NCBI GenBank assembly: GCA_965240325.2
Contig: OZ251224.1
Location: forward strand, 186,001-250,000
Source: Rebecca billardiae RCC1528
Lineage: Eukaryota > Protista > Haptophyta
DNA length: 64,000 nucleotides
Direction of reading: 5' to 3'
Part shown: piece after piece, positions 1,175 to 58,605 of the stretch
Numbering within the stretch: the stretch's first letter is position 1
Layout of the letters: the number at the start of each line of letters is the position of its first letter
Translations under genes and position numbers: made by a program
Notes under the pieces: model-generated
The model's input: only the letters and a program-made list of their open reading frames with translations
The model's database searches: none
Told to the model about the DNA's origin: nothing

Positions 1175-4100
1175 TCAGCCGCAGCCGATCGAGTGCAGGC
1201 CGTGCACGACCACGCCCACGCCCTGCGCGAGCAGCTCGTTGATCGCCTCGCCCGTCGAGCCGCCGCGCGCGATCGCGCGGTCGAAGAGGATGGGCACGAG
1301 CACGGTGACGGCGATGATGATCGGCTCCTCCACGCCGAGCGACTGCACCTCCGCCAGGCTCCAGCTGAGCAGCAGGTAGCGCGTCTGCCCCTCGCCAAAG
1401 CTGAGCGCGTACGAGAGCACGAGTGTGCACAGGGCGGCGTACACCGCCCACACGGCGAGCCACGCGGCGCAGAGGCGGAGGCGCGGGGGCAGCGCGAGCG
1501 CGCGCGCGGCGCGGCCGAGCGCGCCGCGCAGCCCGCGCCGCGCCCTCGCCTCGCGCTCCGCCTCCGCGCCCACCATCTCCTCGAACCAGCCGAGCAGCTC
1601 GGCGTAGGACACGGCGCCGCTGCCGTCTGTGTCGAGCTCGGAGAGCAGCCTGCGCACGCGCCGCGCGCGCAGGCGGAAGCCGAGCGCGTGCAGGAGCGCG
1701 CCAAACTCGGAGGTGTCGATGGCGCCGTTGCCGTCCGCGTCGAACGCGTCGAACTTGTGCCGCAGCATCTCGAGCGTCAGCGCGTCGAGGAGGTGCGTGC
1801 CGCCCGCACCCGGCGGCGGCGGCGCGGCCGGCGGCGGCGGCGCGGCCGGCGGCGGCGGCGCGGTCGGCGGCGTGGGCCGCGCGGGCGAGGGCGGCGTCAG
1901 CGGCTCCGCGCGCGCGCGCCAGCCCTCGGCGGCGGCCGCCGCCTCGGCCGCCGCCGCCTCGCCCTCGCCGCCATCCGTGCCGCCGCCTCCCGTGGGCACG
2001 ACCCTGCTGCCGCGGGCGGCGGCCGCGCGGGGCGAGGCGCGCGCCGGGCGGCGCGCGGGCGGCGACGCGGGCGGCCGTAGCGCGGCGCACTCGGCGCCGC
2101 CGAGCGGCGCGACGGCCGCGGCCGGGCTGCGCGCGCCGCCCGCGCGGCGCGGCGACCAGCGCGGCGGCGAGGGCGCGCCGGCCGAGGGCGGCGGCGACGC
2201 GACGGCGCCCGCGCCCGGCGCCGCGCCGCCCGCCGCTGCGCCGAGCGCGCCGGCTGGCGAGGCCACGGGCGAGGTGCGCGCGCGCGCCCACGCGCGCTCG
2301 CTGCCGCCGTCGGGCGGCGCGGCCGCGCGCGGCGAGCGCGGGCTGGCGGCGGCGCTGCCGCCGCCCGCCGCGCGCGCCGCGGCGGGCGGGTGCTGCTGAA
2401 CGCTCGCCGCCCCGGCGCCCGCGCCCTCGCCCGCGGCCGCCGCCCCGTCCGGCGGCGACGGCGGCATGCCGAGGCTGAATGGAGAGGCGCCGTCGGCGCG
2501 CGCGGACGGCTCTGGGCTCTCGGCGCGCGCGCGGGGCGGCAGCGTCGGCGGCAGCGTCGGCGGCGCGCGCGGCGAGCCGGCGGCCGAGCCCGCCGGCTGC
2601 AGCGGCCGCACCGCGTCCGCGCACTCGGCCGCGCCGCCGCGCGCCGCCCCGCCGGCCGGCGGCGCCCCGGCCGGCGGCGGCTCCGCCGCGCGCGCCTCGT
2701 CCGCCGTGTGTGCGTCGAGCTCGTCGTCGACGGGTCGGGCGCGCAGCTCGGCGTCGAGGACGTCGAGCAGCGCGCCGCGCGACGCGCGCCGCCCCGAGCC
2801 GACGCTGCGCCACGGGCCGGGCGCGGAGGCGCTTCTGAACGAGCCCGCTGCGCTGGCCTGGGCGCTGCCCGCGGCGGCGGCCGCGGCGCGCGCCGCGGCC
2901 GCGTCGCCGTCGCCGCCCAGGCTGGTGCGTCGCGCCACCTCCATGCGCAGCCACGAGCCGCCCTTGCGCCGGTCGGAGACCGTGCGGTGCAGTGCAAACG
3001 ACGAGCCGTTCGAGCCGCCCGCGCTGCCGCCGTCCAGCTCGGCGAGCGACACCGCGATGTTCACGCGCACGGCGGAGCGGAAGGGCGCGCGCTGCCGCCG
3101 CCGCTCGTCCAGCTCCGCCTTGAGGAAGGCGGCGAACACGCGCTGCGAGAGCGGCGCCGCGCGCCGCCCGTACCCCCAGCGGAAGATGGCGCGGAAGAGG
3201 CCGAGCGCGGGCGCGACGAGCGCGGCGGTGAGCACCGCGGTGAGCACCGCGTGCACCAGCACGACGCGCTCGCCGCCCAACTGCGCACCGCCCGCGCCGT
3301 CCGGCCGCGGCGCCTCTCTGGAGTCGTACAGCATGCACGACACGAGCAGCGACAGCAGCGCCATCGACCAGAAAGTCTGGCACAGCTCGGCGCGGCGCGC
3401 GTCCTCCGCGTCGGCGAGCAGCACGCCGAGCAGCGAGTGGTCCGTGCTCACCTTGTCCAGCACGCGCCGCAGCAGCGTGTCCGATGCGCGCGCCCTCCGC
3501 CGCTGCCGCGCGGGCGCGAGCGCGGCGAGCGCGCGCCGCGCCGCGCGGCCGCGCGCCGCCGCCTGCAGCGCGCGCGCCGCCGCCTCGGCGCGCGCGCCCG
3601 CGGCCGCGCCCGCGGCCGATCCCGCGCCCGCAGCGGACGGCGGCGGCGAAGGCGTCCTCGGCGGGCTCGCCCTCGGCGGCTTGGGCTTGGGCGCGCGCGC
3701 GCGCGGCTCGGCGGACGCGCCACGCTCCGCCGCCGCCGCCGCCGCCGCCGCCGTCGGCACGGGCGAGGCGCGCCCGCCGCCCGCCGCGCGTGCGCGCGCG
3801 GAGAAGGAGGCGGCGCGCTGCGCCTCGAGCTCGCGCGACGCGGCGCGCGCGAGCGCGCGCTCGGTCGACGCCATCGCTGCCGCCGCCTGCGCCTCGCGCC
3901 GCCTGCGCTCTGCGCGCTCCGCCTCGCGCCGCGCCGCGCGCTCGGCCGCGTGCCGCCCGCCGCCGAGCGCGGCCGAGAGCGACGACGCCGAGCGCGCGCG
4001 GCTGAGCCGGCCGGTCGAGCCGGTGGGCGAGTCGTCGCACCCCGCGCTGGAGAGCCCGCTGCTCTCGCTCAGCCCGCCCGCCCCCTTCCCGCACCCCTCG

Positions 4101-6323
4101 GCGCCGCGCTCCGCGCGCCGCGCCGCGCCGCCCGGCTCGAGCCTCGCCGAGAGCAGCGCCAGCCGCTGCCGCCGCCTGCGCGCGTCGCGCCAGTCCTGCG
4201 CGCCGAGCAGCGCGACCGTCACGAGGCACGCGGCGGCCATGCTGAGGACGAGGCCGTAGATCAGCGGGCTCGCCTCCACCTGCGCGCGCGAGCTCAGCGG
4301 CGCGCCCGCCTCCTCCGCGCCCAGCGTGTTCACGTTGAAGCTGCGCGCGTCCGCCGCCGCCTCGCCCGCGCTGCCCGGCACGGACACGCCCGCAAAGTCG
4401 GTCAGGTGGTTGCACGCGCAGTAGTGCAGCGACGGGTCGGGGCCCGGCACGGGCGCGCAGCCGTCGTCCGCCCACTGCCGCGCCGCCTCGTCCCAGAAGA
4501 CGCACGCCAGCGCCTCGCCCTCCGCCGCCGGCTGCGCCACCGGTATGTGCAGCACCACCGCCTCCTCCAGCCCGGCCACGCGCAGCGCGCCGCCCCCCGC
4601 CGCCGCGTACAAGCTGGCGGAGAAGACGGGCGTGGACAACCCGCGCGCCACGGACGCGGTGGCGGCGCCGCTCGAGTTGGCGCCGTGCACGTTGCGCGCG
4701 ATCGCCCAGAGCACGACGTCCACGCCGCCGCCGAGCTCCGCCGCCGAGAGCGCGTCGAACACGCCCGCGGGCACGCCGACGCCGCCCTGCCCGCCCGGGC
4801 CGCCGAGCGTCGAGTTGCGCAGCCGCGCCGCGCTCTCACGCCGCGCGCTCACGTTGAGCGCGGCGCCGAGCAGCTGCGCGGCGCCCTCGCCCGACACGGC
4901 GCCCGCGAGCAGCGCGCTCGCGAGCGAGGTGGCGGCGAACGCCGCCGCCGCGCCCACCGCCGCGTCCACGCCCGGCACGCCCGTCTCGCCCGCGCCGAGC
5001 GCCCCGTCCACCGCCGCCATCAGCATGGCCGCCGTGCCGCCGTCCACGCCGTCCGAGCGCGCGCCGTGCGCGAGCGCGCCCGCGTGCTCGAGCGCGGACT
5101 GCTGCGCACCGCCGCTGAGCGCGCCCAGGGGCACGGCGTCGGTGACCACCGCGGCGAGCGCGCCCGCCGAGTGCGCGCGCGCCTCCGCAGTCGACACGCC
5201 CGCCGCCTCCGCGCGCGCCGTCAGCTGCAGCAGCTGCTCCACCGCCCAGGACGCGGCCGCGGCGCTCGCGTTGGGCTGCGCGGCGCCGCCGCCGCCGCCG
5301 AGCGTCGCGGTGGGGAGGAGCCCGGCGAGCGCGCTCACGAGCTGCGTGGCCGCGGCGCCCTGCCCGGCGCCCACGGCCGCGCGCGCACGCGCCAGCAGCT
5401 CGGCCAGCTCCGCGTCGTCGATGGGCGGCGGCGCGCCCACGTCGACGGGCGCGGCCGCGCTCGCCTCCGCGCCCCACGCGTCCCGCACGCGCACGGCGCA
5501 GCTGCGGTTGCCCGCGGGCAGCAGCGCGTCCGCGAAGGGCGCGCTGCCCGCCGCGCCGAGCGAGGCGGCCGCGCTCGCCGCGCCGCCGCCGCCGCCCGCC
5601 ACCTCCGCAGCGTGCGCGAACGCGTAGCTGAGCGGCAGGTCCTCCGCGTCGTCCGCCCAGCCGGACGCCTGCAGTCGGAAGCGCGTCTGCAGCGCCACGC
5701 CCGACGGCGGCGAGACGCTCAGCGCGCCGCCCCACGGCGGGCGGTTGATCGTGACGAGCACCTGGCCGTACACGCTGGCACCCGGCGCGTACGCCGGGCC
5801 CGACGGCGTGACCGTCAGCCGGAACGCGTACGTCGCGCCCGGCGTGAGCACGCCCGGCCGCAGCGCGAGGTTGGGACTTGCCGCGCCCGTGCTGCTGACC
5901 GCACCCGTGTCGTGCAGCGCGAGGCCGGCGGGCCGCGCGGCGCCGTCGGCGTCGAGCAGCGAGGCGGACCACGCGTACGCGAACGAGGCGGCGCCCGCGT
6001 CGGCGAGCGCCTCGGATGCCGCGTCCAGCCGCGCCCGCAGCGCCAGCCGCGCCGAGGGCAGCGCCCAGCTCGGGTTGTACTTGGGCCTGCTCAGAGGCTC
6101 GAACAGCAGCCGCGGCAGAGGGCCGCCCACCACCTCGACGGAGGCGGTGGCGGTGGCGGGGGCGAAGGTGGGCTTGGAGACGGTGAGCGTGAGCGCGTAC
6201 GTGCCGATGCCGAGCACGCCCGCGGGCAGCGCGAGCACCGCCGCCGACGCGTTCGCGCCCAGCTCGACGGGCGCGCCGTCGTCCGCGCGCACCATCGCCC
6301 ACGCGTACGCCAGCCCGGTCGAC

Positions 6324-6354
<31 letters not shown>

Positions 6355-9300
6355 CCGGCTGGTTGGGGTCGAGCGAGGCGCTGCCGTCGACGAGCAGCGC
6401 GGCGCCGGCCGAGACGCGCCGGTCGCCGCCCGCGATCACCGCGCGCAGCGCCTCGCGCAGCACCACCACGCGCACGCTCGCCGCCGCCGCCTGCGAGGGC
6501 GCGGCGGCCATGCTGGCGCGCAGCTCAAAGGTGAACGTGTGCCGAGCGCTCAGTGAGTGCGGCGGCAGCAGCAGCGAGGCGAGGCGCTCGCCGCTGAGGT
6601 CGGGGAGCGCCGCGGCGGAGGCGTCGGCGCTCGGGTCTTCGCTGCGCGCCACGCCCGCCACGCGCCACTCGAAGCCCATCGCCGGCTCGAACGCCGCCGG
6701 CCAGCACGGCGCCAGCCCCGCGTCGCCGCGCAGCAGCAGCGCTTGAGACGCGCGCACGCGCACCTCCGAGGGGCCGGCGATCGCGAGGCTCGGGGCCGCG
6801 CCGCCCGCGCGCGAGATTGCGATCTCGACGGGCGCGGCGGCGACGCCGAGGAACGAGGTGACGCGCAGCACGAACACAAAGCCGCCGCTCACGCCCAGCT
6901 CGTCGGCGCCCAGCGTGAGCACCGCCGTGTCGGCCGGCAGCGCGCGCAGGTGCGCGTTGAGCGCCGCCGCGCGCGCCGAGCGGCTCGGGTCGACGCGCCA
7001 CTCAAAGGCGGCGGGGCCGATGCCGCCGGGCGACGAGGCGGAGGCGTCGAGCTGCAGCGACGCGCCCGGGCAGCTCGAGACGCTCGACGGCCCCGACACC
7101 GCCGCCTCGGGCGCCGGGCACGGCACGCCCTTGCCGCACGGCGCGTCCGCGTCAACCGCCGCGCCGCCGGCCGCGTACAGCTGCTCGCGCTCGGCGCAGC
7201 CGTCCGCGCACGCGCCGGGCAGCAGCGCGCGCGCGCGCAGCGCGAGCGCGCTGCCCGGCCGCACGGCGGTGCGCGCGTCGAGCTGCGCCACCAGCGCGCT
7301 GCCGTCCGCCCAGTAGCACAGCGGCGCCGCGCCGCCGCGCCCGCGCAGCAGGTCGACGCTGCTGTCGCTGAGCACGACGCTGCACGGCTGCGCGCCCGAC
7401 ATGCCCGCGCGGTCGGTCGGCTGACCGTCGAAGCGCAGCAGCAGCGACGTCGCCTCGGCGTTGAAGGTCACCGAGAGCAGCTGCGGCGGGTGCAGCCCGA
7501 CGAACTCGAAGAACACGCCGCCCTCCGCCTCCGCCTCGTCGGGCGTGAACTGCTGCCCGTTGAGCGCCACGCGCACGGCCGCGCGCCCCGCTGCGCCGTA
7601 CCGCGTGACCACGCCCACGTGCGAGCCGTTGCCGCGCGTCGGCGCGGAGGCGAGCGCGGCGCCAAAGGCCACGCGCAGCAGGGACAGCTCGCCGAGCGCG
7701 TCGAGCCCCTCGCCGAGCACCTCCACGCTCGTGCCGCCCTTCGCGTCGCCCGCCGCCGGGTGCACGCGCAGCAGCGTCGGCTCGTCGTAGTAGGCGTAGC
7801 GCGCGCCGCCGCCAGCCGTGGTCGAGTGCGCGCTGCCGTTGCCCAGCGAGATCTCGAGGGCGTACGACGCGGGCGCGGCGGAGGGCGCGGGCGGGAGCGT
7901 GCAGCGCGCGCGGCTCGAGCCGTCCGCCGCGGGCGCCAGCAGCGCCGCGGGCGCCGCGCAGCCGCCGCCGCCGCCGCCGAGCACGCAGCACAGCAGCCCG
8001 GGCCCGTGCTCGGCAAAGCCCGCGCCCACCACCGTCACCACCGTGCCGCCGCGCACGGGGCCGCCGGGCGGGTGGACGGACGCGACCGAGACGGCGCTCA
8101 GCTCGTACAGCTCGAAGGTGATCGGCTCGAACAGCGGCTGCACGCCCGCGTCCGAGCCGTCCAGCGCCAGGCTCAGCCGGTACGCGCCCGCAGCGGCGGC
8201 AGCGGGTGCGGCACACACAACACGCGCGTCGTCCAGCACTGCCGCGGCCGAGGGCAGCGCCGCCGCGCCCGTTGGCTCGGAGGCGGCGTCGACGGGCGTG
8301 AACGCGCAGCGCGCGCCGCTCAGCGAGGCGAAGCCGCCGCCGTGCAGCGTGATCGCGCCCGCTGCGCCGAGCGGCGCGCCCGCCGGCGTGCCCGAGAGGA
8401 CGAATGCCCGGACAGCTCGGGGCGGCGGGGGCGGCGCGCTCGGCGGCGGGCGCGCGGGGCGCGGCGGTGGCGGCCGCGGCGGCGACGCCGGTGGAGGGAG
8501 AGGCAGGCCGGTGGGGGGCGGCGGCGGTGCGGGCGGCATGCGCGGCGGCGGTGCGCTCGGCGGCGCGAGGCGCGGCGGCGGCCGTGGGGCGATGGCCGAC
8601 GGTGGCTGCGGCGGCGACGAGGGCGGAGGCGGCGCCTGCGGAGGCGCGGGCAGCTGCGGCGATGCAGGGCGCGGCGGCGGGGTCGGCGGCGGAGGGCGTG
8701 GCGGCTGGCTCGGTGGCGGCTGAGGCGGAGGTGCTGGTGGGCGCGACGGTGGCAGCGCTGGCGGTGGGCGTGGCAGTGGCGACGGTGGCGGCGAGCGGGG
8801 AGGCGGGCGCGGCGGTGCGCTCGGAGGCGGCACAGGCGTCGGGCTCCGTGGCGGCGGGCTGACTGGCGGGCCTGGCGGCGGGCTTGGCTGATGTGCTGGC
8901 AGCGGCGATGGTGGCGGTGGGATGGGCAGTGGATGCGGTGGCGGCGGCGACGACGGCGGAGACGAGGGCGAAGTGGGCGGTGGCGGGGCAGGGGATCTCG
9001 ACGGGGGTGGGCTGGGTGGCGGGCTCGGTGGCAGCGGCACAGGCGGTGATGAGGGCGGTGGCGAGGGCGGTGGGCTCGGTGTTGGGCGCAGCGGCGGCGT
9101 TGACGGCGGCGGCACCGGTGGAGGGCTCTGCGGCGAGCTCGGCGGTGGCGGCGCGGGCAGCGGTGGTGGTGGCGGCGACGGCGGTGGGCTCGGCGGTGGG
9201 CTCGGCGGTGGCGGCAACGGCGGTGGCGACGGTGGAGGCAAAGGTGGCGGCACCGGTGGCGGGCGTGGCGGTTGCGGTGCAGGCGGTGGTGATGGTGGCG

Positions 9301-12300
9301 GCAACGGTGGTGGGCTCGGTGGTGGGCTGGGCGGTGGCGGCAACGGCGGCTGTGATGGTGGCGGCAACGGTGGTGGGCTCGGTGGCGGGCTCGGCGGTGG
9401 CGGCAGCGGCGGCTGTGATGGTGGCGGTGACGGCGGTGGGCTCGGCGGTGGGCTCGGCGGTGGCGGCAACGGCGGTGGCGACGGTGGAGGCAAAGGTGGC
9501 GGCACCGGTGGCGGGCGTGGCGGTTGCGGTGCAGGCGGTGGTGATGGTGGCGGCAACGGTGGTGGGCTCGGTGGTGGGCTGGGCGGTGGCGGCAACGGCG
9601 GCTGTGATGGTGGCGGCAACGGTGGTGGGCTCGGTGGCGGGCTCGGCGGTGGCGGCAGCGGCGGCGGTGATGGTGGCGGTGACGGTGGTGGGCTCGGCGG
9701 TGGGCTCGGTGGTGGCGGCAACGGTGGTGGCGACGGTGGAGGCAAAGGTGGCGGCACCGGTGGCGGGCGTGGCGGTGGCGGTGCAGGCGGTGGTGATGGT
9801 GGCGGCAACGGTGGTGGGCTCGGTGGTGGGCTGGGCGGTGGCGGCAGCGGCGGCTGTGATGGTGGCGGCAACGGTGGTGGGCTCGGTGGCGGGCTCGGCG
9901 GTGGCGGCAGCGGCGGCTGCGATGGTGGCGGTGACGGTGGTGGGCTCGGTGGTGGGCTCGGTGGTGGCGGCAACGGTGGTGGCGACGGTGGAGGCAAAGG
10001 TGGCGGCACCGGTGGCGGGCGTGGCGGTTGCGGTGCAGGCGGTGGTGATGGTGGCGGCAACGGTGGTGGGCTCGGTGGCGGGCTCGGCGGTGGCGGCAGC
10101 GGCGGTGGCGACGGTGGAGGCAAAGGTGGCGGCACCGGTGGCGGGCGTGGCGGTGGCGGTGCAGGCGGTGGTGATGGTGGCGGCAACGGTGGTGGGCTCG
10201 GTGGTGGGCTGGGCGGTGGCGGCAGCGGCGGCTGCGATGGTGGCGGTGACGGTGGTGGGCTCGGTGGCGGGTTCGGCGGTGGGGGCAGCGGCGGCGGTGA
10301 TGGTGGCGGTGACGGTGGTGGGCTCGGTGGTGGGCTCGGCAGTGGCGGCAACGGCGGCGGCGACGGTGGAGGCAAAGGTGGCGGCACCGGTGGCGGGCGT
10401 GGCGGTTGCAGTGCAGGCGGTGGTGATGGTGGCGGCAACGGTGGTGGGCTCGGTGGTGGGCTGGGCGGTGGCGGCAGCGGCGGCTGCGATGGTGGCGGTG
10501 ACGGTGGTGGGCTCGGTGGCGGGCTCGGCGGTGGCGGCAACGGCGGCTGTGATGGTGGCGGTGACGGTGGTGGGCTCGGTGGCGGGCTCGGCGGTGGGGG
10601 CAGCGGCGGCGGTGATGGTGGCGGTGACGGTGGTGGGCTCGGTGGTGGGCTCGGCAGTGGCGGCAACGGTGGTGGCGACGGTGGAGGCAAAGGTGGCGGC
10701 ACCGGTGGCGGGCTTGGGGGTGGCAGTGCAGGCGGTGGCGACGGTGGCGGCAATGGCGGCGGGCTCGGCGGCGGGCTCGGCGGTGGCGGCAACGGTGGCG
10801 GCGACGGTGGCGGCGATGGTGGCTGGCTTGGTGGCGGGCTTGGCGGTGGCGGTGCAGGCGGTGGTGAAGGTGGCGGCAACGGTGGTGGGCTCGGTGGCGG
10901 GCTCGGCGGTGGCGGCAACGGCGGCGGTGATGGTGGCGGTGACGGCGGCGGCCTCGGTGGCGGGCTCGGCGGTGGCGGCAACGGTGGCGGCGACGGTGGC
11001 GGCGATGGTGGCTGGCTTGGTGGCGGGCTTGGCGGTGGCGGTGCAGGCGGTGGTGAAGGTGGCGGCACCGGTGGCGGGCTCGGCGGCGGGCTTGGGGGTG
11101 GCAGTGCAGGCGGTGGCGACGGTGGCGGCAATGGCGGCGGGCTCGGCGGCGGGCTCGGCGGTGGCGGCAACGGTGGTGGCGACGGTCGCGGCGATGGTGG
11201 CTGGCTTGGTGGCGGGCTTGGCGGTGGCGGTGCAGGCGGTGGTGTGGGTGGCGGCAACGGTGGTGGGCTCGGCGGCGGGCTCGGCGGTGGCGGCAGCGGC
11301 GGCTGCGATGGTGGCGGCAACGGTGGTGGGCTCGGTGGGGGGCTCGGCGGTGGCGCCAACGGCGGCGGTGATGGCGGCGGCAACGGTGGTGGGCTCGGTG
11401 GCGGGTTCGGCGGTGGGGGCAGCGGCGGCGGTGATGGTGGCGGTGACGGTGGTGGGCTCGGTGGCGGGTTCGGCGGTGGGGGCAGCGGCGGCGGTGATGG
11501 TGGCGGTGACGGTGGTGGGCTCGGTGGTGGGCTCGGCAGTGGCGGCAACGGTGGCGGCGACGGTGGAGGCAAAGGTGGCGGCACCGGTGGCGGGCGTGGC
11601 GGTTGCAGTGCAGGCGGTGGTGATGGTGGCGGCAACGGTGGTGGGCTCGGTGGTGGGCTGGGCGGTGGCGGCAGCGGCGGCTGCGATGGTGGCGGTGACG
11701 GTGGTGGGCTCGGTGGCGGGCTCGGCGGTGGCGGCAACGGCGGCTGTGATGGTGGCGGTGACGGTGGTGGGCTCGGTGGCGGGCTCGGCGGTGGGGGCAG
11801 CGGCGGCGGTGATGGTGGCGGTGACGGTGGTGGGCTCGGTGGTGGGCTCGGCAGTGGCGGCAACGGTGGTGGCGACGGTGGAGGCAAAGGTGGCGGCACC
11901 GGTGGCGGGCTTGGGGGTGGCAGTGCAGGCGGTGGCGACGGTGGCGGCAATGGCGGCGGGCTCGGCGGCGGGCTCGGCGGTGGCGGCAACGGTGGCGGCG
12001 ACGGTGGCGGCGATGGTGGCTGGCTTGGTGGCGGGCTTGGCGGTGGCGGTGCAGGCGGTGGTGAAGGTGGCGGCAACGGTGGTGGGCTCGGTGGCGGGCT
12101 CGGCGGTGGCGGCAACGGCGGCGGTGATGGTGGCGGTGACGGCGGCGGCCTCGGTGGCGGGCTCGGCGGTGGCGGCAACGGTGGCGGCGACGGTGGCGGC
12201 GATGGTGGCTGGCTTGGTGGCGGGCTTGGCGGTGGCGGTGCAGGCGGTGGTGAAGGTGGCGGCACCGGTGGCGGGCTCGGCGGCGGGCTTGGGGGTGGCA

Positions 12301-15300
12301 GTGCAGGCGGTGGCGACGGTGGCGGCAATGGCGGCGGGCTCGGCGGCGGGCTCGGCGGTGGCGGCAACGGTGGTGGCGACGGTCGCGGCGATGGTGGCTG
12401 GCTTGGTGGCGGGCTTGGCGGTGGCGGTGCAGGCGGTGGTGTGGGTGGCGGCAACGGTGGTGGGCTCGGCGGCGGGCTCGGCGGTGGCGGCAGCGGCGGC
12501 TGCGATGGTGGCGGCAACGGTGGTGGGCTCGGTGGGGGGCTCGGCGGTGGCGCCAACGGCGGCGGTGATGGCGGCGGCAACGGTGGTGGGCTCGGTGGCG
12601 GGTTCGGCGGTGGGGGCAGCGGCGGCGGTGATGGTGGCGGTGACGGTGGTGGGCTCGGTGGTGGGCTCGGCGGTGGCGGCAACGGTGGTGGCGACGGTGG
12701 AGGCAAAGGTGGCGGCACCGGTGGCGGGCGTGGCGGTGGCGGTGCAGGCGGTGGTGTGGGTGGCGGCAACGGTGGTGGGCTCGGCGGCGGGCTCGGCGGT
12801 GGCGGCAGCGGCGGCTGCGATGGTGGCGGCAACGGTGGTGGGCTCGGTGGGGGGCTCGGCGGTGGCGCCAACGGCGGCGGTGATGGCGGCGGCAACGGTG
12901 GTGGGCTCGGTGGCGGGTTCGGCGGTGGGGGCAGCGGCGGCGGTGATGGTGGCGGTGACGGTGGTGGGCTCGGTGGTGGGCTCGGCGGTGGCGGCAACGG
13001 TGGTGGCGACGGTGGAGGCAAAGGTGGCGGCACCGGTGGCGGGCGTGGCGGTGGCGGTGCAGGCGGCGGTGAAGGTGGCGGCAATGGCGGCGGGCTCGGC
13101 GGCGGGCTCGGCGGTGGCGGCAACGGTGGCGGCGACGGTGGAGGCAAAGGTGGCGGCACCGGTGGCGGGCTTGGGGGTGGCAGTGCAGGCGGTGGCGACG
13201 GTGGCGGCAATGGCGGCGGGCTCGGCGGCGGGCTCGGCGGTGGCGGCAACGGTGGCGGCGACGGTGGCGGCGATGGTGGCTGGCTTGGTGGCGGGCTTGG
13301 CGGTGGCGGTGCAGGCGGTGGTGAAGGTGGCGGCACCGGTGGTGGGCTCGGTGGCGGGCTCGGCGGTGGCGGCAGCGGCGGCGGTGATGGTGGCGGCAAC
13401 GGTGGTGGGCTCGGCTGCGGGCTCGGCGGTGGCGGCAGCTGCGGCGGTGATGGTGGCGGTGACGGTGGTGGGCTCGGTGGTGGGCTCGGCGGTGGCGCCA
13501 ACGGCGGCGGTGATGGCGGCGGCAACGGTGGTGGGCTCGGTGGCGGGTTCGGCGGTGGGGGCAGCGGCGGCGGTGATGGTGGCGGTGACGGTGGTGGGCT
13601 CGGTGGTGGGCTCGGCGGTGGCGGCAACGGTGGTGGCGACGGTGGAGGCAAAGGTGGCGGCACCGGTGGCGGGCGTGGCGGTGGCGGTGCAGGCGGCGGT
13701 GAAGGTGGCGGTGACGGTGGTGGGCTCGGTGGCGGGCTCGGCGGTGGCGGCAACGGTGGTGGCGACGGTGGAGGCAAAGGTGGCGGCACCGGTGGCGGGC
13801 TTGGCGGTGGCGGTGCAGGCGGCGGTGAAGGTGGCGGCAATGGCGGCGGGCTCGGCGGCGGGCTCGGCGGTGGCGGCAACGGTGGCGGCGACGGTGGAGG
13901 CAAAGGTGGCGGCACCGGTGGCGGGCTTGGGGGTGGCAGTGCAGGCGGTGGCGACGGTGGCGGCAATGGCGGCGGGCTCGGCGGCGGGCTCGGCGGTGGC
14001 GGCAACGGTGGCGGCGACGGTGGCGGCGATGGTGGCTGGCTTGGTGGCGGGCTTGGCGGTGGCGGTGCAGGCGGTGGCGACGGTGGCGGCAATGGCGGCG
14101 GGCTTGGCGGCGGGCTCGGCGGTGGCGGCAACGGTGGCGGCGACGGTGGCGGCGATGGTGGCTGGCTTGGTGGCGGGCTTGGCGGTGGCGGTGCAGGCGG
14201 TGGTGAAGGTGGCGGCAACGGTGGTGGGCTCGGTGGCGGGCTCGGCGGTGGCGGCAACGGCGGCGGTGATGGTGGCGGTGACGGCGGCGGCCTCGGTGGC
14301 GGGCTCGGCGGTGGCGGCAACGGTGGCGGCGACGGTGGCGGCGATGGTGGCTGGCTTGGTGGCGGGCTTGGCGGTGGCGGTGCAGGCGGTGGTGAAGGTG
14401 GCGGCACCGGTGGCGGGCTCGGCGGCGGGCTGCGGGGTGGCGGCACCGGTGGCGGCGATGGTGGCGGTGACGGTGGCGGCCTCGGTGGCGGGCTCGGCGG
14501 TGGCGGCAACGGTGGCGGCGACGGTGGAGGCAAAGGTGGCGGCACCGGTGGCGGGCTTGGCGGTGGCGGTGGTGAAGGTGGCGGTGACGGTGGTGGGCTC
14601 GGCGGCGGGCTCGGCGGTGGTGGCAACGGTGGCGGCGACGGTGGCGGGCTTGGAGGTGGCGGTGACGGTGGTGGGCTCGGTGGCGGGCTTGGCGGTGGCG
14701 GGAACGGTGGCGGCGACGGTGGCGCTGACGGTGGCGGTGACGGTGGTGGGCTCGGCGGCGGGTTCGGCGGTGGCGGCACGGGCGGCGGTGACGGTGGCGG
14801 CAACGGTGGCGGGCTCGGCGGCGGGCTTGGGGGTGGTGGCAACGGTGGCGCCGATGGTGGCGGTGACGGTGGCGGGCTCGGTGGCGGGCTTGGCGGTGGC
14901 GGCAACGGTGGCGGCGACGGTGGCGGCGCTGGTGGCTGGCTCGGTGGCGGGCTTGGCGGTGGCGGTGCGGGCGGTGGCGACGGTGGCGGCACCGGTGGCG
15001 GGCTCGGTGGCGGGCTCGGCGGTGGCGGCAACGGTGGCGGCGATGGTGGCGGGGACGGTGGCGGGCGCGGAGGCGGGCTCGGAGGTGGCGGTGCTGGCGG
15101 CGGCGAAGGGGGGGGCACCGGTGGTGGTGGGCTCGGCGGCGGGCTCGGCGGTGGCGGAGCAGACGGGGGCGATGGTGGCGGGCTCGGTGGAGGGCTCGGC
15201 GGCAACACTGGTGGCGGGCTCGGTGGTGGGCCAGGCGGGGGGCGTGGAGGCGGTGAGGGCGGTGGCGATGGTGGTGAGCTCGGCGGTGGCGGTGACGGTG

Positions 15301-16657
15301 GCGGCGATGGCGGCGGGCGCGGCGGCGATGGCGGTGACGGCGGGCTCGGCGGCGGCGACGGCGACGTGATCCCGCCCCGCTGCAAGTACCACAGCGCGCC
15401 CGCATTCGACCCGCCGTCGTCGTCGCCCGGCGCGCCGACGAGCAGGTCGAGCGCGCCGTCGCCGTCCACGTCGGCCGCGCCGAGTGCCGAGCCGAAGGCG
15501 TCGAAGTCGCCGAGCTCGAGGCTCAGGTTGGCGGAGAGCTGCGAGAGCTTCTGCTCGGCGTGCACGGTGCCGTTCGGCGTGAGGAGGAGCACGTACACCG
15601 CGCCCGCGTCGTTGGCCCCGTCCAGGTCCGCCGACGCGCCGACCGCGCAGTCCGCCACCCCGTCCCCGTCCACGTCCCCGAGTGCGGCCGCGCTGTACCC
15701 GAAGAAGAGGTTGTTGATCAGAGGGTCGGACAGCCCGCCCACCGCGGAGCCGATCATCTGCTCGGCGGAGACCGTGCCGCCGGCGGTGAGCATCAGCACG
15801 TACACCGCGCCGCGCCGGTTCCCGCCCTGGTCCGAGTCCTGCGCGCCCACCACCACGTCGGGCACGCCGTCGCCGTTCAGATCGCCCAGCGCGGCGAGCG
15901 CGCACCCAAACTTGTCGGTCGGGCCGAGCGAGGCGCCGAGCCCGCCGCCGCCCTCCTCGATCTTGGCGTGGGAGCGGACGGCGGTCGCGTTCGCGGCGAG
16001 GAAGAGCACCCACACGGCGCCACCCCCGTCGCCGGGCGAGCCGACCAGCAGCTCGAGCTGCCCGTCGCCGTCCAGGTCGCCCGGGCTGGCGAGCGCGGTG
16101 CCAAAGTCGTCAAACGCGGCGAGGCTGCCGGCAAAGCCGGCCGTGCCCTGGGTGATCTCCACGTGGGACTTGACGGCGCCGCTGACCTGAAGGAAGCAGA
16201 TGTACACGGCCCCCCGGCCCGTCGCGCCGCCCTCCCTCGCGCCGATCGCCGCGTCGGGCACGCCGTCGTGGTCTGCGTCTCCGAGCGCGCCCACCGCCGA
16301 CCCAAACTTGCCGTCCGCGTCGAAGGTGGGGAGGCCGCCCTCGCCGGAGGCGAGGCGATGGGCGTCGCGGACGGTGCCGTTTCGTCGCATGAAGAGCACC
16401 AGCGCCGCGCCGTCCGTGCTCGCCGCCCCTTCCAGGCCGGCGATCGCGTCGGTCACGCCGTCCCCGTCCAGGTCGCCCACAAACGCAAGCCCGCGCTCGC
16501 CCAGGAGCTCGCCGGCCGTGACGGCGGACGGGCCGAGGCCACCCTGCTGAGGAGCGAGCTTTTGCTCGAGGCTCACGCTCCATAAATGCGCGCTCGCTGC
16601 GGGCGCAAGCGCAAGCAGCAGCGCGAGCAGGCGCCAGGGACGCCGCTGGCGCCGCAT
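1175..16657 (-). CDS. Giant polycystin-1/REJ-like cell-surface receptor: signal peptide, FG-GAP beta-propeller, extensin-like Pro/Ser stalk, IPT/TIG repeats, PKD/REJ module, GAIN/GPS, 5 TM helices, EF-hand pair
   Basis: 5160-aa ORF. Signal peptide LLALLLALAPAASA; six DxD/NGDG FG-GAP repeats; IPT motifs (SVHPPGGPVRGGTVVTVVGAGF); REJ motifs (NRPPWGGALSVSPPSGVALQTRFRL, DLPLSYAF); GPS CVFWD...W...GC...CACNHLTDF; PKD1-like TM motifs (YALSFG...EEPII); EF loops DADGNGAIDTSE and DTDGSGAVSYAE. Confidence 0.88.
8420..15365 (-). repeat. Coding minisatellite (SPPP/LPPP/VPPP units) with higher-order duplications, including a 1197-bp tandem duplication
   Basis: Continuous GGY-rich repeat on the + strand; rare variants recur at exactly 1197-bp offset (ggttgcagtg 10404/11601; gacggtcgcg 11181/12378). 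Confidence 0.95.
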
Positions 16658-16958: not shown

Positions 16959-18917
16959 TCACAGGACGGTGAGGCGGCTACCCGTCAACGCCGCCGACGC
17001 CTGACGAGTCTCCGTCGTCGCCCGCCTGACGCGTGGCAGCGGCGCCGATGGCTCCTGCGTCACCGCGATCGCGGGCGAGTCGCTGTCGACGTCGATCGCT
17101 GAGCGGCGCGCCGATGCCGAGCCAAAAGCGCTCCGCGCCGTGCCCAGCGCCACGAGCTCAAGCGAGGAGCGCCCGGTGAGCGAGGCGGGGAAGTGGTCGT
17201 GTGGCAAAGCGGCCGGCTCCTCGGCGGCCGCGCTGGCACGGCGCCGAGGGTTGTACCGCAGCACGTCGAGCGGCTGCTTGGCGTTGGCCTTGGCCTGCGC
17301 GAGGCCAAGCAGGCTGCCCAGCTGCGCCGCCACCGCCTCCACCGCCAACACGTCCGCCGCCTCGAACGGCAGGGCGCGGCGCGCGGCGGGGCCATCCGCG
17401 AGATTCATCGATTGCACGCGGTCTAGCAGCAGCAGCACGCCGATCACCTCCTCGCCCCCGCGCGTCAACGGCACCGCAAGCGCCGACTTGCCCGCGAGCA
17501 CGTGCGAGCGCGCGCTCGCATGCCCGCCCGCTGCTGCGCTTCGCGCTTCGCACTTTGGGTCCACGACCACGGTGTCGGCGTGCTCGAGGGCGGCGGCGGA
17601 GAGCTGCGGGATGGCTGCCAGCACGGCAGCGCCCGTGCCGCCCTTGCCTCCCTCGGCGCGCGCCGCCGTGTGCACGACGCGCAGCCTGCTGTGACGCCTC
17701 CACGGCTTTGGATCGGGCAGCAGCACACTCGCGCAGCGGACGGCCATGCTCTCCGCGAGCAGCGCGGCGATGCGCTCGATGTACTCGCGCAGCGCGCTCG
17801 CGGCGAGGGCGTGCGCGTCGCCCTCGCCCGCGAGCGCGGTCTGCGCATCCTCCAGAGCCCCGCTCGCTGCGCGCAGCAGCCGCTTGCGTCGGTACGCCGG
17901 TGGCGGGCCCGCAGGCTGGGCAAGCCGATCGCGCGCCGGCTCGCCCTCGGACGCAGCGCGGTGCAGGGGCGGCATGGCCGGCGCATCGACTGGCTCGTGG
18001 GCCGGGGAGGCATCCTCGTCGGGAGGAGCGAGCGAGAGCGGGCGGTTGCGGCGCGGCGGGTCCGTGAAGGGCCCCCTCGCTTGCAGCACGCTCGCCATGG
18101 GCGAGCGGCCATGCGTCGCGAGCGAGGATGAGATCGGCGGGGTGCGCGCCGAGGGGAGCGGCGAAGCAGCGCCGTCCGACGAGGGAGTCGGGGCGGAGGA
18201 CGGAGGCGTGGCAGTGGTCGTGGGGCTGGGTGCGGCCGAGGAGAGGGACACGGACACCGACAGGCCCTGTACCCACCCAGGCGTGCGCGGCCGAGAGCTG
18301 GGCATCGGCGGCGGGAGAGCGTGCAGAGGCGAGGCTGTGCGCGGCCGATGCATGCGCGAGGCCAAAGGGCCCACGCGGCGCGGAAGCGCATCGACCTCCG
18401 CCTCGGCCGAGGGCGCGTCCTCCAGCTGCTGCGCCGGCACCATCAGGCCCGGGAAGCCAGCGCTGAGGCCCGCATGCGTCCACGGCTGCGACCGCGGCTG
18501 CGCGTGCGCGTTTCCGTGCCTCGGCCACACGGGCTCGTCGTCTGCGCGCTCGCGCTTGAAGGATGATGTTGTGGCCTCCGCGTCGGCGCACGGGGATGAA
18601 GTGGCACTCTTCGCGCTCACCACGTCAGCAGGCGGGCTGATGAGGGGCACAAGTGTTGTTTTGGCGTCGCTATCCCCTGACTCAAATGCCGCGTGCGAGA
18701 GAGGCGTGCGCGGTACGCTCAGCGTCGCGGTCGCTGCGGGCATTGCAGCTGCTGCCGCCGGCTTTGGCGAGGAGACCTCGACATCGCCCCACGCGACCAC
18801 GCTCGAAGGGCGAGTGCTCTGTGGAGCCGGTGTGGCGAGTGGGCGGGCTGGAGGAAGGGAGATCCGCCACTGTTGCGCCTGCGAGGGCACGTCCGCGACG
18901 CGCACGTCGCGGAGCAT
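16959..18917 (-). CDS. GAF domain-containing protein with long disordered N-terminus (start uncertain)
   Basis: 652-aa ORF; C-terminal GAF-like motifs KSALAVPLTRGGEEVIGVLLLLDR and PFEAADVLAVEAVAAQLGSLL. Confidence 0.65.
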   Translation of the reverse strand: MLRDVRVADVPSQAQQWRISLPPARPLATPAPQSTRPSSVVAWGDVEVSSPKPAAAAAMPAATATLSVPRTPLSHAAFESGDSDAKTTLVPLISPPADVVSAKSATSSPCADAEATTSSFKRERADDEPVWPRHGNAHAQPRSQPWTHAGLSAGFPGLMVPAQQLEDAPSAEAEVDALPRRVGPLASRMHRPRTASPLHALPPPMPSSRPRTPGWVQGLSVSVSLSSAAPSPTTTATPPSSAPTPSSDGAASPLPSARTPPISSSLATHGRSPMASVLQARGPFTDPPRRNRPLSLAPPDEDASPAHEPVDAPAMPPLHRAASEGEPARDRLAQPAGPPPAYRRKRLLRAASGALEDAQTALAGEGDAHALAASALREYIERIAALLAESMAVRCASVLLPDPKPWRRHSRLRVVHTAARAEGGKGGTGAAVLAAIPQLSAAALEHADTVVVDPKCEARSAAAGGHASARSHVLAGKSALAVPLTRGGEEVIGVLLLLDRVQSMNLADGPAARRALPFEAADVLAVEAVAAQLGSLLGLAQAKANAKQPLDVLRYNPRRRASAAAEEPAALPHDHFPASLTGRSSLELVALGTARSAFGSASARRSAIDVDSDSPAIAVTQEPSAPLPRVRRATTETRQASAALTGSRLTVL

Positions 18918-33067: not shown

Positions 33068-33263
33068 CCAAGTCATGTTTCTCTCGGGCCGCACGTCGGC
33101 CACGCGCCACTTGATCGCCATCCTGCCGCCACGAGCCGGGTGCGGGGCGCCTGGAGGCGGAACAACACCTCGTGGAACGGGTGGTCGCAATGGCGGCGCG
33201 AGCGCCAGTTTGCCGGCAATCAATCAGAAAGCGAGCGCATCAGGCGAAGTAGTGCGCGCGTTG

Positions 33264-35503: not shown

Positions 35504-35535
<32 letters not shown>

Positions 35536-38456: not shown

Positions 38457-38514
38457 GGCCATGGGCGTATACTAACGACGTGGTATGCAACGGGCAGGCG
38501 TCAGAGTCAGCATA

Positions 38515-43250: not shown

Positions 43251-43660
43251 CGCCGAGGCGGCAACCAGACCGCCCCTTTCGTCGTGCGTGTTTCGCTTCG
43301 GTTGCTCAGGTTTGACGAAAGCTTGGTTAACCAAATGGCGGGCCATTATGAATTTACGAATGATTATATTGGCCCAGCAAGGGGGTTCAGAGCCCCAGAC
43401 GCTTTTCGTCAAAAGGTCCGTCAATTGCTGTCAAGTTGCTGATATGCAAATGAGTGACCGAACGGTCGTCAGATCGATATGATACCTATGCGTTTCTCAT
43501 CAGGGCAAGGGCCGTGTCCAATCAGGGTCTATTAATTAGGCGCCAACTCCCTGATCAATAGGAGTAGCCGTACCCACACGGAGCTCGCCCAAGCTAAAAA
43601 GCTACCTAACCCGAACGCGTCCCGTCATTCCGCGGCGACTGCTGGTGGAGCCCCCAAAAC

Positions 43661-45259: not shown

Positions 45260-45298
<39 letters not shown>

Positions 45299-58574: not shown

Positions 58575-58605
<31 letters not shown>

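What the first reader, a model, noticed from the sequence alone, without database searches (positions are those of the whole stretch)
1175..16657. Giant integrin-propeller / extensin-stalk / polycystin-1 chimeric receptor
Seen: one uninterrupted ORF joins six FG-GAP repeats, ~2300 aa of Pro/Ser repeats, IPT and REJ modules, an intact GPS autoproteolysis motif (CNHL/TDF, ~4390-4510) and PKD1-like TM helices. Known: GPS/REJ proteins are adhesion and mechanosensing receptors, and polyproline II rises ~0.31 nm per residue. Inference: the stalk could hold the Ca2+-binding propeller up to ~0.7 micrometre from the membrane, acting as a long-range contact, prey or mate sensor with a sheddable ectodomain. 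I do not know of this combination being characterised.
Basis: partly seen in the sequence, partly recalled or inferred. Interest (0 to 1): 0.75.

Follow-up and report, generated by a model that had tools for sequence, protein, structure and literature searches.

The report
Giant stalked REJ-GAIN algal surface receptor
A very GC-rich alga, probably a pavlovophyte haptophyte, has an intact intronless gene for a 5,160-residue surface protein: a calcium-binding propeller head on a proline rod of up to about 0.7 micrometre, anchored by a self-cleaving polycystin-type module and a five-helix membrane base; it is one shuffled member of a family of about 100 such genes, and I found no paper describing the family.

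Summary
Window 1175-16657 (minus strand) is one open frame of 5,160 codons. It is bounded by AT-richer non-coding DNA, and GC3 is 0.9-1.0 throughout the non-repeat parts.

Pfam finds six FG-GAP repeats, IPT/TIG, REJ, GPS and an EF-hand pair. The Pro/Ser stalk is 2,318 residues. A predicted structure of the region before TM1 matches only GAIN domains of adhesion GPCRs, and the HL|T cleavage triad is invariant in 18 paralogs.

The "polycystin-1" label is only half right. There are five predicted helices rather than eleven, no PLAT domain and no channel half. Instead there is a conserved IQ motif and an EF-hand pair in the cytosolic loops.

The gene is not a one-off chimera. The genome holds at least 90 REJ loci in giant open frames, and about 20 of them have FG-GAP heads. 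All ten sampled paralogs show the same layout. Heads, bases and tails are exchanged between paralogs.

Relatives in Diacronema lutheri and Pavlovales sp. CCMP2436 carry the base without head or stalk.

The scan had already reported this family several times on other DNA of this genome. Function (adhesion or mechanosensing with a sheddable ectodomain) is inferred, not shown.

The parts
1175..16657 (-). Whole coding sequence: 5,160 codons plus TGA, single exon
16589..16657 (-). Signal peptide, aa 1-23 (basic n-region, Leu-rich core, ASA|H site)
   Evidence: read from the sequence; hydrophobic peak
15371..16588 (-). FG-GAP head, aa 24-429: six repeats of about 67 aa, each with an integrin-type Ca2+ loop
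   Evidence: Pfam PF01839 E 1.3e-37; loops listed
8417..15370 (-). Pro/Ser stalk, aa 430-2747: 72% Pro, SPPP/LPPP units, no Cys/Tyr/Lys. The base DNA period is 63 nt. It holds a 1,197-nt tandem duplication with 1,109 nt exact (10356 vs 11553)
7358..8416 (-). IPT/TIG region, aa about 2748-3100. At least one TIG by Pfam; it aligns to plexin IPT domains
   Evidence: Pfam TIG E 5.8e-8; plexin-A1 E 1.8e-4
5393..6583 (-). REJ domain, aa 3359-3755
   Evidence: Pfam PF02010 E 2.4e-37
4376..5416 (-). GAIN domain, aa about 3748-4094: helical subdomain plus beta sandwich
   Evidence: AF2 model with pLDDT 75 and pTM 0.69; the top 11 Foldseek PDB hits are all GAIN domains
4391..4507 (-). GPS motif, aa 4051-4089, with four Cys and two Trp
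   Evidence: Pfam PF01825 E 1.9e-8; invariant columns
4400..4408 (-). Predicted autoproteolysis triad H4084-L4085|T4086
   Evidence: invariant in 11 and 18 aligned sequences; lies between the last two strands of the model
4196..4264 (-). TM1, aa 4132-4154
   Evidence: Kyte-Doolittle 2.34; helix
3536..3568 (-). IQ-type motif [ILVM]Q-x3-RG-x3-R, aa 4364-4374, in cytosolic loop 1
   Evidence: present in 9 of 10 window-genome genes (absent in H_C3) and in P0001; near-invariant Q, R, G, R; weak profile hits to myosin-V/VIIa IQ peptides and Sp17
3317..3385 (-). TM2, aa 4425-4447
   Evidence: conserved AEL-Q-FW motif
3188..3271 (-). TM3, aa 4463-4490
1583..1768 (-). EF-hand pair with two canonical 12-residue loops, aa 4964-5025, in cytosolic loop 2
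   Evidence: Pfam EF-hand_7 E 3.6e-10; calmodulin lobes E about 1e-16; pLDDT about 90
1403..1480 (-). TM4, aa 5060-5085
1268..1342 (-). TM5, aa 5106-5130, followed by the conserved tail motif GEAINELLA

Best explanation
This is a real, intact, intronless gene for a giant surface receptor of a lineage-specific family.

Layout shown by sequence and model, from the outside in:
- signal peptide
- six-repeat FG-GAP propeller with six Ca2+-type loops
- 2,318-residue SPPP/LPPP rod
- IPT/TIG
- REJ
- GAIN domain with an intact GPS (HL|T)
- TM1
- cytosolic loop with an IQ motif
- TM2-TM3
- long disordered loop with a canonical EF-hand pair
- TM4-TM5
- short conserved tail

How it probably works (inferred):
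1. The GAIN domain cuts itself between L4085 and T4086. The roughly 4,060-residue outer fragment then stays bound only non-covalently.
2. The rod, probably hydroxylated and glycosylated, holds the head up to several hundred nanometres from the membrane.
3. Binding or pulling on the head loads the GAIN domain, or tears the outer fragment off. This exposes the invariant T-x-F-x-G-V-x-V-P peptide to the five-helix base.
4. The signal is read out through Ca2+/calmodulin-type elements (IQ motif and EF-hands), possibly together with one of the separately encoded PKD2-type channels.

The family diversifies by swapping heads, bases and tails between paralogs.
For: Gene reality:
- Clean start and stop, with AT-richer flanks.
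- GC3 of 0.9-1.0 in this frame all along, including the low-complexity loops.
- Stalk codon usage avoids CCC (3% against 34-46% elsewhere), as it does in the paralogs.

Domains and fold:
- Pfam hits for FG-GAP, TIG, REJ, GPS and EF-hand.
- GAIN fold: model pLDDT 75; the top PDB matches are 8oek, 4dlq, 4dlo and others, E 3e-9 to 5e-5.
- C, W, H, L, T and F of the GPS are invariant in 18 sequences.
- Five TM peaks place the IQ motif and the EF-hands on the same cytosolic side.
- The IQ motif and EF-hands are conserved in paralogs.

Family context:
- 103 REJ matches in the genome, most in open frames of 2,000-21,000 aa.
- About 19-21 of them lie in one frame with FG-GAP.
- 21 loci carry the EF/TM4-5 module.
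- Ten of ten sampled paralogs, on nine contigs, are single frames with the same order.
- dN/dS is 0.25-0.62 between recently exchanged modules.

Other support:
- About 30 PKD_channel loci are encoded separately.
- At least 29 P4H-type oxygenase loci.
- The GPS/GAIN tethered-peptide mechanism in PC1 and adhesion GPCRs is described in PMC9672506.
Against: - No expression, protein, cleavage, glycosylation or localisation data exist for this gene.
- The five-helix base has no detectable relative of known function, and its model is poor (pLDDT 49). Any coupling mechanism is therefore conjecture.
- Not every GAIN domain with an HL|T triad cleaves.
- The IQ assignment rests on a short motif and on weak profile hits (E 0.02-1).
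- Stalk length may be polymorphic or mis-assembled, because it contains a 1.1-kb exact internal repeat.
- dN/dS of about 0.4-0.6 indicates only moderate constraint.
Confidence: 0.55

Rival explanations
1. The protein is mainly structural. It would be a membrane-anchored, mucin-like or HRGP-like coat protein forming a thick glycocalyx on a naked flagellate. The GAIN cut would serve as a mechanical breakaway link rather than a signalling switch.
For: - 45% of the protein is a Pro/Ser rod without Cys, Tyr or Lys.
- The genome holds dozens of paralogs with long rods.
- Constraint is only moderate.
- The membrane base has no recognisable signalling fold.
Against: - A plain anchor needs one helix. 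Here five helices, an IQ motif, a canonical EF-hand pair and a conserved tail are kept across paralogs and in other Pavlovales.
- The peptide just after the cleavage site is invariant.
Confidence: 0.25
2. It is a gamete or self/non-self recognition molecule. It would combine an agglutinin-type fibril, as in Chlamydomonas SAG1/SAD1, with a REJ-type fertilisation receptor, as in sea-urchin REJ, PKDREJ and Ectocarpus Esi0130_0068. The large shuffled family would supply recognition specificity.
For: - REJ/GPS proteins act in fertilisation in animals. One is a candidate in brown algae, with male-gamete-limited expression and positive selection (PMC4700764).
- Heads are variable (FG-GAP, LRR, unknown) on near-identical bases.
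Against: - No stage-specific expression data exist.
- I know of no documented sexual cycle in Pavlovales (own knowledge, not checked).
- No excess of non-synonymous change was seen in the one head pair tested (dN/dS 0.52).
Confidence: 0.15
3. It is an artefact: a chance open frame in 80% GC DNA, a mis-join across the repeat, or a dead gene.
For: - Frames of more than 2,000 aa also stay open on other frames of the same DNA.
- The stalk holds a 1,109-nt exact repeat that could mislead an assembler.
Against: - HMM E-values of 1e-37 fall on both sides of the stalk, in the same frame.
- GC3 periodicity runs throughout.
- The same head-stalk-base order occurs in ten independent loci on nine contigs.
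- Stalk-specific codon choice is shared by paralogs.
- dN/dS is below 1.
Confidence: 0.03

Closest known systems
Polycystin-1 family (PKD1, PKD1L1-3, PKDREJ, sea-urchin suREJ1-3)
   Same: A REJ domain is followed by a GAIN domain with an HL|T GPS just before the first membrane helix. The ectodomain is large and modular. Partner PKD2-type channel genes are present in the genome.
   Different: Five helices rather than eleven. No PLAT domain in loop 1, no channel-like TM6-11, and no PKD/Ig repeats, WSC or C-lectin. There is no sequence similarity in the membrane part. An IQ motif and an EF-hand pair sit in the loops instead.
Adhesion GPCRs (latrophilin, BAI, GPR126, CD97 and others)
   Same: They are the best structural matches to the GAIN domain. 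Both have variable adhesion heads on a self-cleaving juxtamembrane module, and a T-x-F-type peptide after the cut (PMC9672506).
   Different: No 7TM secretin-like bundle and no HormR domain. The REJ domain is a polycystin-family feature.
Pavlovales REJ proteins: Diacronema lutheri KAG8462819.1 and KAG8461221.1; Pavlovales sp. CCMP2436 KAJ1633484.1, KAJ1635852.1 and KAJ1636386.1
   Same: The same base, from TIG-REJ-GAIN/GPS through the TM segments to EF-hand and TM4-5. It is 36% identical to KAG8462819.1 over 1,559 aa.
   Different: These proteins are only about 1,300-2,150 aa. At the two D. lutheri loci checked, neither the gene nor the 10 kb upstream holds a proline stalk or an FG-GAP head. 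They are annotated only as hypothetical, EF-hand or REJ domain-containing proteins.
Hydroxyproline-rich glycoprotein fibrils: Chlamydomonas sexual agglutinins SAG1/SAD1, volvocine HRGPs, plant extensins (own knowledge)
   Same: Ser-(Pro)3-4 repeats are expected to form a rigid polyproline-II shaft that carries a globular head.
   Different: The stalk is about ten times longer than extensin modules and lacks Tyr cross-link motifs. It is anchored by a multi-pass membrane base. Hydroxylation and glycosylation are untested; the genome does hold at least 29 P4H-type loci.
FG-GAP propellers: integrin alpha, and bacterial giant FG-GAP/VCBS surface proteins
   Same: FG-GAP repeats with D-x-D-x-D-G-x-x-D calcium loops.
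   Different: Six repeats are detected, not seven. There is no thigh/calf or integrin tail. The nearest matches in the word search are bacterial giant proteins at 43-50% identity.
P0213, an unnamed 4,643-aa product in NCBI assembly GCA_024449685.1
   Same: FG-GAP arrays, REJ, GPS (C-x-C-x-HLT-x-F type) and several helices lie in one intronless frame.
   Different: It has no proline stalk and no EF/IQ module, it carries many propellers, and its GC content is 57%. It belongs to a different lineage and is uncharacterised.

Membership tests
Polycystin-1 (PKD1) family | REJ domain in the ectodomain | tested here: met
   PF02010 E 2.4e-37, 129 bits against a cut-off of 25
Polycystin-1 (PKD1) family | GAIN domain with a GPS next to TM1 | tested here: met
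   PF01825 E 1.9e-8; GAIN fold matches; the motif lies 46 aa before TM1
Polycystin-1 (PKD1) family | PLAT/LH2 domain in the first cytosolic loop | tested here: not met
   No PF01477 hit in the protein. The whole genome has only two PLAT loci, neither near a REJ locus.
Polycystin-1 (PKD1) family | Eleven membrane helices, the last six channel-like (PKD_channel) | tested here: not met
   Five hydrophobic segments. No PF08016 hit. No PKD1 or PKD1L chain matched in PDB sequence searches.
GAIN/GPS autoproteolytic receptors | HL|T/S triad with conserved Cys and Trp of the GPS | tested here: met
   C, W, W, C, C, C, H, L, T and F are invariant in 11 and 18 aligned sequences. The definition is taken from PMC9672506.
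GAIN/GPS autoproteolytic receptors | Two-subdomain GAIN fold (helical A, beta-sandwich B) with the cut before the last strand | tested here: met
   The AF2 model has seven helices plus a beta sandwich, with HLT between strands 378-383 and 388-395. Foldseek hits to 8oek, 4dlq, 4dlo, 8vti, 6v55 and others. This is a predicted model, not a solved structure.
GAIN/GPS autoproteolytic receptors | Actual self-cleavage into non-covalently bound fragments | not testable with these tools
   Needs protein biochemistry
Adhesion GPCR | Seven-helix class B2 bundle after the GAIN domain | tested here: not met
   Five helices with long loops. No 7tm_2 Pfam hit. Only the GAIN/GPS region matches adhesion GPCR chains.
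Integrin alpha | Seven-bladed FG-GAP propeller followed by thigh/calf domains and a single TM | tested here: not met
   Six repeats were found, followed directly by the proline stalk. The blade number of the fold was not modelled.
Extensin / HRGP | Ser-Pro3-5 repeats | tested here: met
   270 SPPP motifs in 2,318 aa
Extensin / HRGP | Tyr-containing cross-link motifs (extensins); Hyp and O-glycans | tested here: not met
   The stalk has no Tyr, so it is not an extensin in the strict sense. Hydroxylation and glycosylation cannot be tested here.
Stalked REJ-GAIN-5TM family of this genome | Order: head, Pro stalk, TIG-REJ-GAIN/GPS, TM1, IQ, TM2-3, EF pair, TM4-5, GEAINELLA tail | tested here: met
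   All elements are present in the window gene. Most of the nine fully recovered paralogs show the same layout; IQ motif, EF-hands and the GEAINELLA tail are missing in H_C3, and EF-hands and that tail in I_C7.

The most novel reading that the evidence does not exclude
The gene belongs to a repertoire of about 100 micrometre-scale 'receptors on poles'. In this reading the repetitive stalk DNA and the low-complexity loop DNA act as recombination hinges. Different binding heads (FG-GAP, LRR and others) are repeatedly re-mounted on near-identical self-cleaving REJ-GAIN bases and on different cytosolic tails. That would be a combinatorial surface-recognition system in a unicellular alga. It could serve for prey, bacteria, viruses or mates, with force-triggered shedding coupled to Ca2+/calmodulin-type signalling through a new five-helix transducer.
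Probability: 0.3. Interest if true: 0.85.

Novelty: new variant of a known kind. Interest (0 to 1): 0.62.

Why it matters
According to the review read here (PMC9672506), GAIN/GPS autoproteolysis is found only in the polycystin-1 and adhesion GPCR families, which are studied mostly in animals. This gene adds three things.

- **A different membrane core.** The same self-cleaving switch sits on a five-helix base with built-in IQ and EF-hand elements. This offers a natural experiment on what the tethered peptide acts upon.
- **An extreme spacer.** The stalk could reach about 0.7 micrometre on a cell only a few micrometres wide (cell size from own knowledge). That raises testable questions about long-range contact sensing, about force transmission along polyproline rods, and about how such DNA is kept stable. 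The stalk avoids CCC codons.
- **Module exchange.** Swapping of heads, bases and tails between about 100 paralogs would be a new example of combinatorial diversification of surface receptors in protists.

For haptophyte biology, the family gives candidate genes for cell-surface recognition, about which I know of little published work.

Tried and rejected
- **The repeat finder on the stalk.** It gave only redundant 12-nt-shifted families. I replaced it with an exact-repeat script.
- **First own-genome search with the 1,061-aa tail.** It failed. I repeated it with the last 274 aa. The 'stops inside' reported there for paralogs did not hold up, because the fetched paralogs are uninterrupted frames.
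- **AF2 of the GPS-to-C-terminus part.** It was too poor (pLDDT 49, pTM 0.32) for a fold search, so I ran none on it.
- **PDB searches of the TM1-TM3 region.** Profile and sequence searches gave only weak IQ-motif hits and calmodulin hits for the EF pair. No PKD1-type match appeared.
- **ESM Atlas look-up of the tail.** It returned nothing usable.
- **Literature searches.** The word 'REJ' was swamped by 'reject...'. No paper combined REJ and FG-GAP, or REJ and Pavlovales.
- **Second fetch of paralog DNA.** I wanted the 16,357- and 21,132-aa frames and two other subfamilies. A family-wide census of heads, stalks and breakpoints was therefore not done.
- **Intron read-through in the A/R/P-rich loops.** I considered and rejected this because GC3 stays at 0.90 or above in every window.
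- **Bacterial origin of the contig.** I considered and rejected this. The nearest named relatives of the base are haptophyte nuclear genes, and the surroundings hold eukaryotic-type genes.


Full report

The minus strand of window 1175-16657 is one open frame of 5,160 codons. The DNA is 77-84% GC, and frames of more than 2,000 codons stay open in other phases too. Length alone is therefore no evidence. Four things show that this frame is the coding one.

- Pfam hits lie on both sides of the repeat, in the same frame: FG-GAP at E 1.3e-37 and REJ at E 2.4e-37.
- GC at third codon positions is 0.94-1.00 outside the stalk. It never drops below 0.90 in any 30-codon window of the low-complexity tail, so I see no sign of a read-through intron.
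- The first ATG after an upstream stop opens a classical signal peptide, and the TGA is followed by AT-rich DNA. The 5' flank is also AT-richer.
- The stalk repeats have periods of 63, 126, 189 and 315 nt, and every long internal repeat offset is a multiple of 63.

**2. Anatomy**

Residue numbers are followed by window coordinates in the 'parts' section of this report.

- **Signal peptide:** aa 1-23.
- **Head:** aa 24-429. Six FG-GAP repeats of about 67 aa, each with a D-x-[DN]-x-D-G-x-x-[DE] loop.
- **Stalk:** aa 430-2747. It is 2,318 residues, 72% Pro and 14% Ser, with 270 SPPP and 110 LPPP motifs and no Cys, Tyr or Lys.
- **IPT/TIG region:** found by Pfam and aligned to plexin IPT domains.
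- **REJ:** aa 3359-3755.
- **Region up to TM1:** modelled with an 18-sequence alignment (pLDDT 75, pTM 0.69). It folds as seven helices plus a beta sandwich, and H4084-L4085-T4086 lies between the last two strands.
  - Its 11 best PDB matches are all GAIN domains of adhesion GPCRs: BAI2, latrophilin-1 and -3, BAI3, GPR126, GPR110, CELSR1, CD97 and GPR56, at E 3e-9 to 5e-5.
  - The four Cys, two Trp and H-L-T-x-F of the GPS are invariant in all aligned paralogs.
- **Membrane part:** five hydrophobic segments follow the GPS, at aa 4132-4154, 4425-4447, 4463-4490, 5060-5085 and 5106-5130.
  - With the N-terminus outside, loops 1 and 2 and the C-terminus are cytosolic.
  - Loop 1 carries a long charged helix and an IQ-type motif (L-Q-x3-R-G-x3-R, aa 4364-4374). 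This motif is present in nine of the ten genes of this genome that I examined (all but H_C3). It is also present in an environmental homolog.
  - A profile of this region hits only IQ peptides of myosin V and VIIa and Sp17 in the PDB, and only weakly (E 0.02-1).
  - Loop 2 is about 570 residues, mostly disordered, and ends in two canonical EF-hands.
  - The tail after TM5 (GEAINELLA...) is conserved.
- **What is missing:** no PLAT, PKD_channel or 7TM hit anywhere in the protein.

**3. Context: a family, not a one-off chimera**

The window is contig 5 (186001-250000) of a 72-Mb, 41-contig assembly.

- The genome gives 103 REJ matches, that is at least 90 loci. Nearly all lie in open frames of 2,000-21,000 codons.
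- About 19-21 of those frames also hold FG-GAP repeats.
- 21 loci hold the EF-hand/TM4-5 module, 46-56% identical.
- PKD2-type channel domains occur at about 30 other loci, nearly all in open frames under 2,300 aa and none at a REJ locus. PLAT occurs only twice.

I fetched ten paralogs from nine contigs. Each is a single frame with a 1,000-2,700-residue proline stalk. Nine were recovered in full, 4,100-5,700 codons each; the tenth (J_C13) was fetched only in part. The nine share the order head, stalk, GPS motif, IQ motif, EF-hand and conserved tail; H_C3 and I_C7 lack some of the tail elements. The heads differ. They are FG-GAP in most, LRR in one, unrecognised in one and truncated in one. A mis-join in this window is therefore very unlikely.

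**4. Module exchange**

Pairwise comparison of the parts gives a mosaic.

- The TIG-REJ-GAIN base is 94-97% identical among five genes on five contigs (A_C19, D_C34, E_C18, F_C1, G_C14).
- The heads of those five genes are unrelated or only 42% identical.
- The heads of B_C5 and I_C7 are 93% identical, although their bases are only 46% identical.
- The tail of F_C1 is 91-97% identical to that of B_C5, although their bases are 56% identical.

At the DNA level, the shared block between A_C19 and three partners starts inside the stalk, about 520 codons before its end. It stops just after TM1, in the low-complexity loop. Between these recently exchanged modules dS is 0.03-0.18 and dN/dS is 0.25-0.62. 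That points to recent transfer and moderate purifying selection.

The window gene itself has no near-identical partner among the ten sampled. Its head is 42-58% identical to the other FG-GAP heads, its base 39-65% and its tail 26-65% to the other nine genes.

**5. Relatives elsewhere**

A profile of the GPS-to-C-terminus part was searched against 1.84 billion representative proteins. It found 44 proteins at E <= 1e-30 and 969 at E <= 1e-10, although many hits are EF-hand-only proteins. Local domain mapping of the best 150 shows about 50 true relatives carrying GAIN/GPS, TM or EF/TM4-5 parts.

The named relatives are nuclear proteins of two haptophytes:
- Diacronema lutheri: KAG8462819.1 and KAG8461221.1.
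- Pavlovales sp. CCMP2436: KAJ1636386.1, KAJ1633484.1 and KAJ1635852.1. One cluster also holds an MMETSP transcript, so the base module is transcribed there or in a close relative.

I could not name the species.

None of the 150 best hits has a proline stretch above 110 residues or an FG-GAP head. The two D. lutheri loci have neither in the gene nor in the 10 kb upstream. KAG8462819.1 aligns from its residue 22 to our residue 2761, at 36% identity over 1,559 aa. So the base is shared within Pavlovales. Head plus stalk looks like an addition in this lineage. One caveat applies: short-read assemblies and gene callers would lose such repeats.

A word search with the head, restricted to giant proteins, found mostly bacterial FG-GAP proteins at 43-50% identity. 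It also found one unnamed 4,643-aa product (P0213, assembly GCA_024449685.1, 57% GC). That protein combines many FG-GAP repeats, REJ, a GPS and several helices, without a proline stalk. FG-GAP+REJ+GPS is therefore rare but not unique.

The word search with the TIG-REJ-GPS part among giant proteins found a single partial homolog from an environmental assembly.

**6. How it probably works**

Shown:
- the domain order and the membrane topology logic;
- an intact and conserved GPS inside a GAIN-like fold;
- conserved IQ and EF-hand elements on the cytosolic side;
- family-wide conservation.

Inferred from established knowledge of GAIN receptors (PMC9672506):
1. Self-cleavage occurs at L4085|T4086.
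2. The roughly 4,060-residue outer fragment stays attached non-covalently through the last beta strand.
3. Load on the head, passed down the rod, distorts the GAIN domain or removes the outer fragment.
4. This exposes the invariant T-x-F-x-G-V-x-V-P peptide to the membrane core.

More speculative: the IQ motif and the EF pair form a Ca2+-dependent switch, either within the molecule or through calmodulin. One of the separate PKD2-type channels might be the partner, as in PC1/PC2.

The 0.72-micrometre figure is a contour length for a perfect polyproline-II helix, so it is an upper bound. The genome has at least 29 prolyl-hydroxylase-type loci, which is compatible with an HRGP-like modified rod but proves nothing.

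**7. Rivals**

- A mainly structural coat protein remains possible.
- A role specifically in gamete or self recognition also remains possible. Ectocarpus has a REJ/GPS protein with male-gamete-limited expression and positively selected sites (PMC4700764).
- An artefact is very unlikely, for the reasons in sections 1 and 3.

**8. Comparison and novelty**

The protein works like a GAIN/GPS adhesion receptor and contains the polycystin-family REJ module. It fails two defining features of polycystin-1 (PLAT, and 11 TM with a channel-like half). It also fails the 7TM feature of adhesion GPCRs. It should therefore not be filed as a member of either family.

I found no paper describing REJ proteins with FG-GAP heads or proline stalks, or REJ proteins in Pavlovales. 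The public relatives are annotated only as hypothetical, EF-hand or REJ domain-containing proteins.

I rate it a new variant of a known kind: known modules, a new architecture and a new membrane core.

The scan has already reported this family on other DNA of the same genome (notes s1-332035, s1-343730, s1-338727, s1-343728, s1-350546, s1-363204). My results were obtained before I read those notes, and they agree with them.

**9. Limits**

- No expression or protein data exist for this gene.
- The structure evidence is predicted, not solved.
- The five-helix core could not be modelled with confidence.
- The family census is a lower bound, and the largest paralogs could not be fetched.

Noticed in passing
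L014-L033 (paralogs on G000 contigs C19, C5, C17, C34, C18, C1, C14, C3, C7, C13): Paralogs are mosaics. The TIG-REJ-GAIN base is 94-97% identical in five genes on five contigs whose heads are unrelated (FG-GAP, LRR, unknown). Two genes share a 93% identical head on bases only 46% identical. One gene combines the base of one group with the tail of another. The shared DNA block starts inside the stalk repeats and ends in the low-complexity loop after TM1.
   Followed up: partly
window 8417-15370 (-): Codon choice switches inside the stalk. Pro is CCG/CCA with only 3% CCC, against 34-46% CCC elsewhere in the gene. Leu is 67% TTG (1-2% elsewhere) and Ala is 65% GCA (3-6% elsewhere). GC3 falls from about 0.97 to about 0.6, and the longest C run is 8. 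Three paralogs show the same CCC avoidance. This looks like selection against long C/G homopolymer tracts.
   Followed up: partly
window 10356-12661: A 1,197-nt tandem duplication lies inside the stalk, with 1,109 nt identical (10356-11464 against 11553-12661). It is either a very recent in-frame expansion or an assembly risk. Stalk length may vary between strains.
   Followed up: no
G000:C37:39235-40575 and G000:C32:532088-533242: REJ domains lie in open frames of 21,132 and 16,357 codons, and several more frames exceed 10,000 codons (contigs C10, C13, C11, C18, C16). If these are single genes, they are among the longest protein-coding frames I know of.
   Followed up: no
G000:C19:1563000-1632000: Four head-stalk-REJ genes lie in tandem, about 17.5 kb apart, with REJ at 1573818, 1591482, 1608927 and 1626821 and frames of 5,350-5,921 codons.
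   Followed up: partly
L036 (NCBI GCA_024449685.1, contig JAANST011488362.1), 2001-15932: An unrelated public assembly (57% GC) holds an intronless 4,643-codon gene with many FG-GAP repeats, REJ, a GPS and several helices, but no proline stalk. I did not identify the organism.
   Followed up: partly
L034 and L035 (Diacronema lutheri GCA_019448385.1): The D. lutheri homologs of the base (about 2,090 aa) start directly at the TIG region. They have no stalk or FG-GAP head in the gene or in the 10 kb upstream.
   Followed up: yes
window 16959-18917 (-): The upstream neighbour on the same strand is a 652-aa frame with a weak GAF domain hit (E 1.2e-4).
   Followed up: no
window 57601-61278 (-): A 1,225-aa frame has an N-terminal RING finger and a C-terminal TPR hit. 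Other long frames at 32807-38462 and 43625-47446 gave no Pfam hit.
   Followed up: no
L013 (ENA ERZ4290864, NODE_3211): The only giant homolog found by the word search sits on a 9.7-kb contig that still carries Nextera adaptor sequence at both ends. It is an untrimmed assembly product, and the protein is truncated.
   Followed up: no
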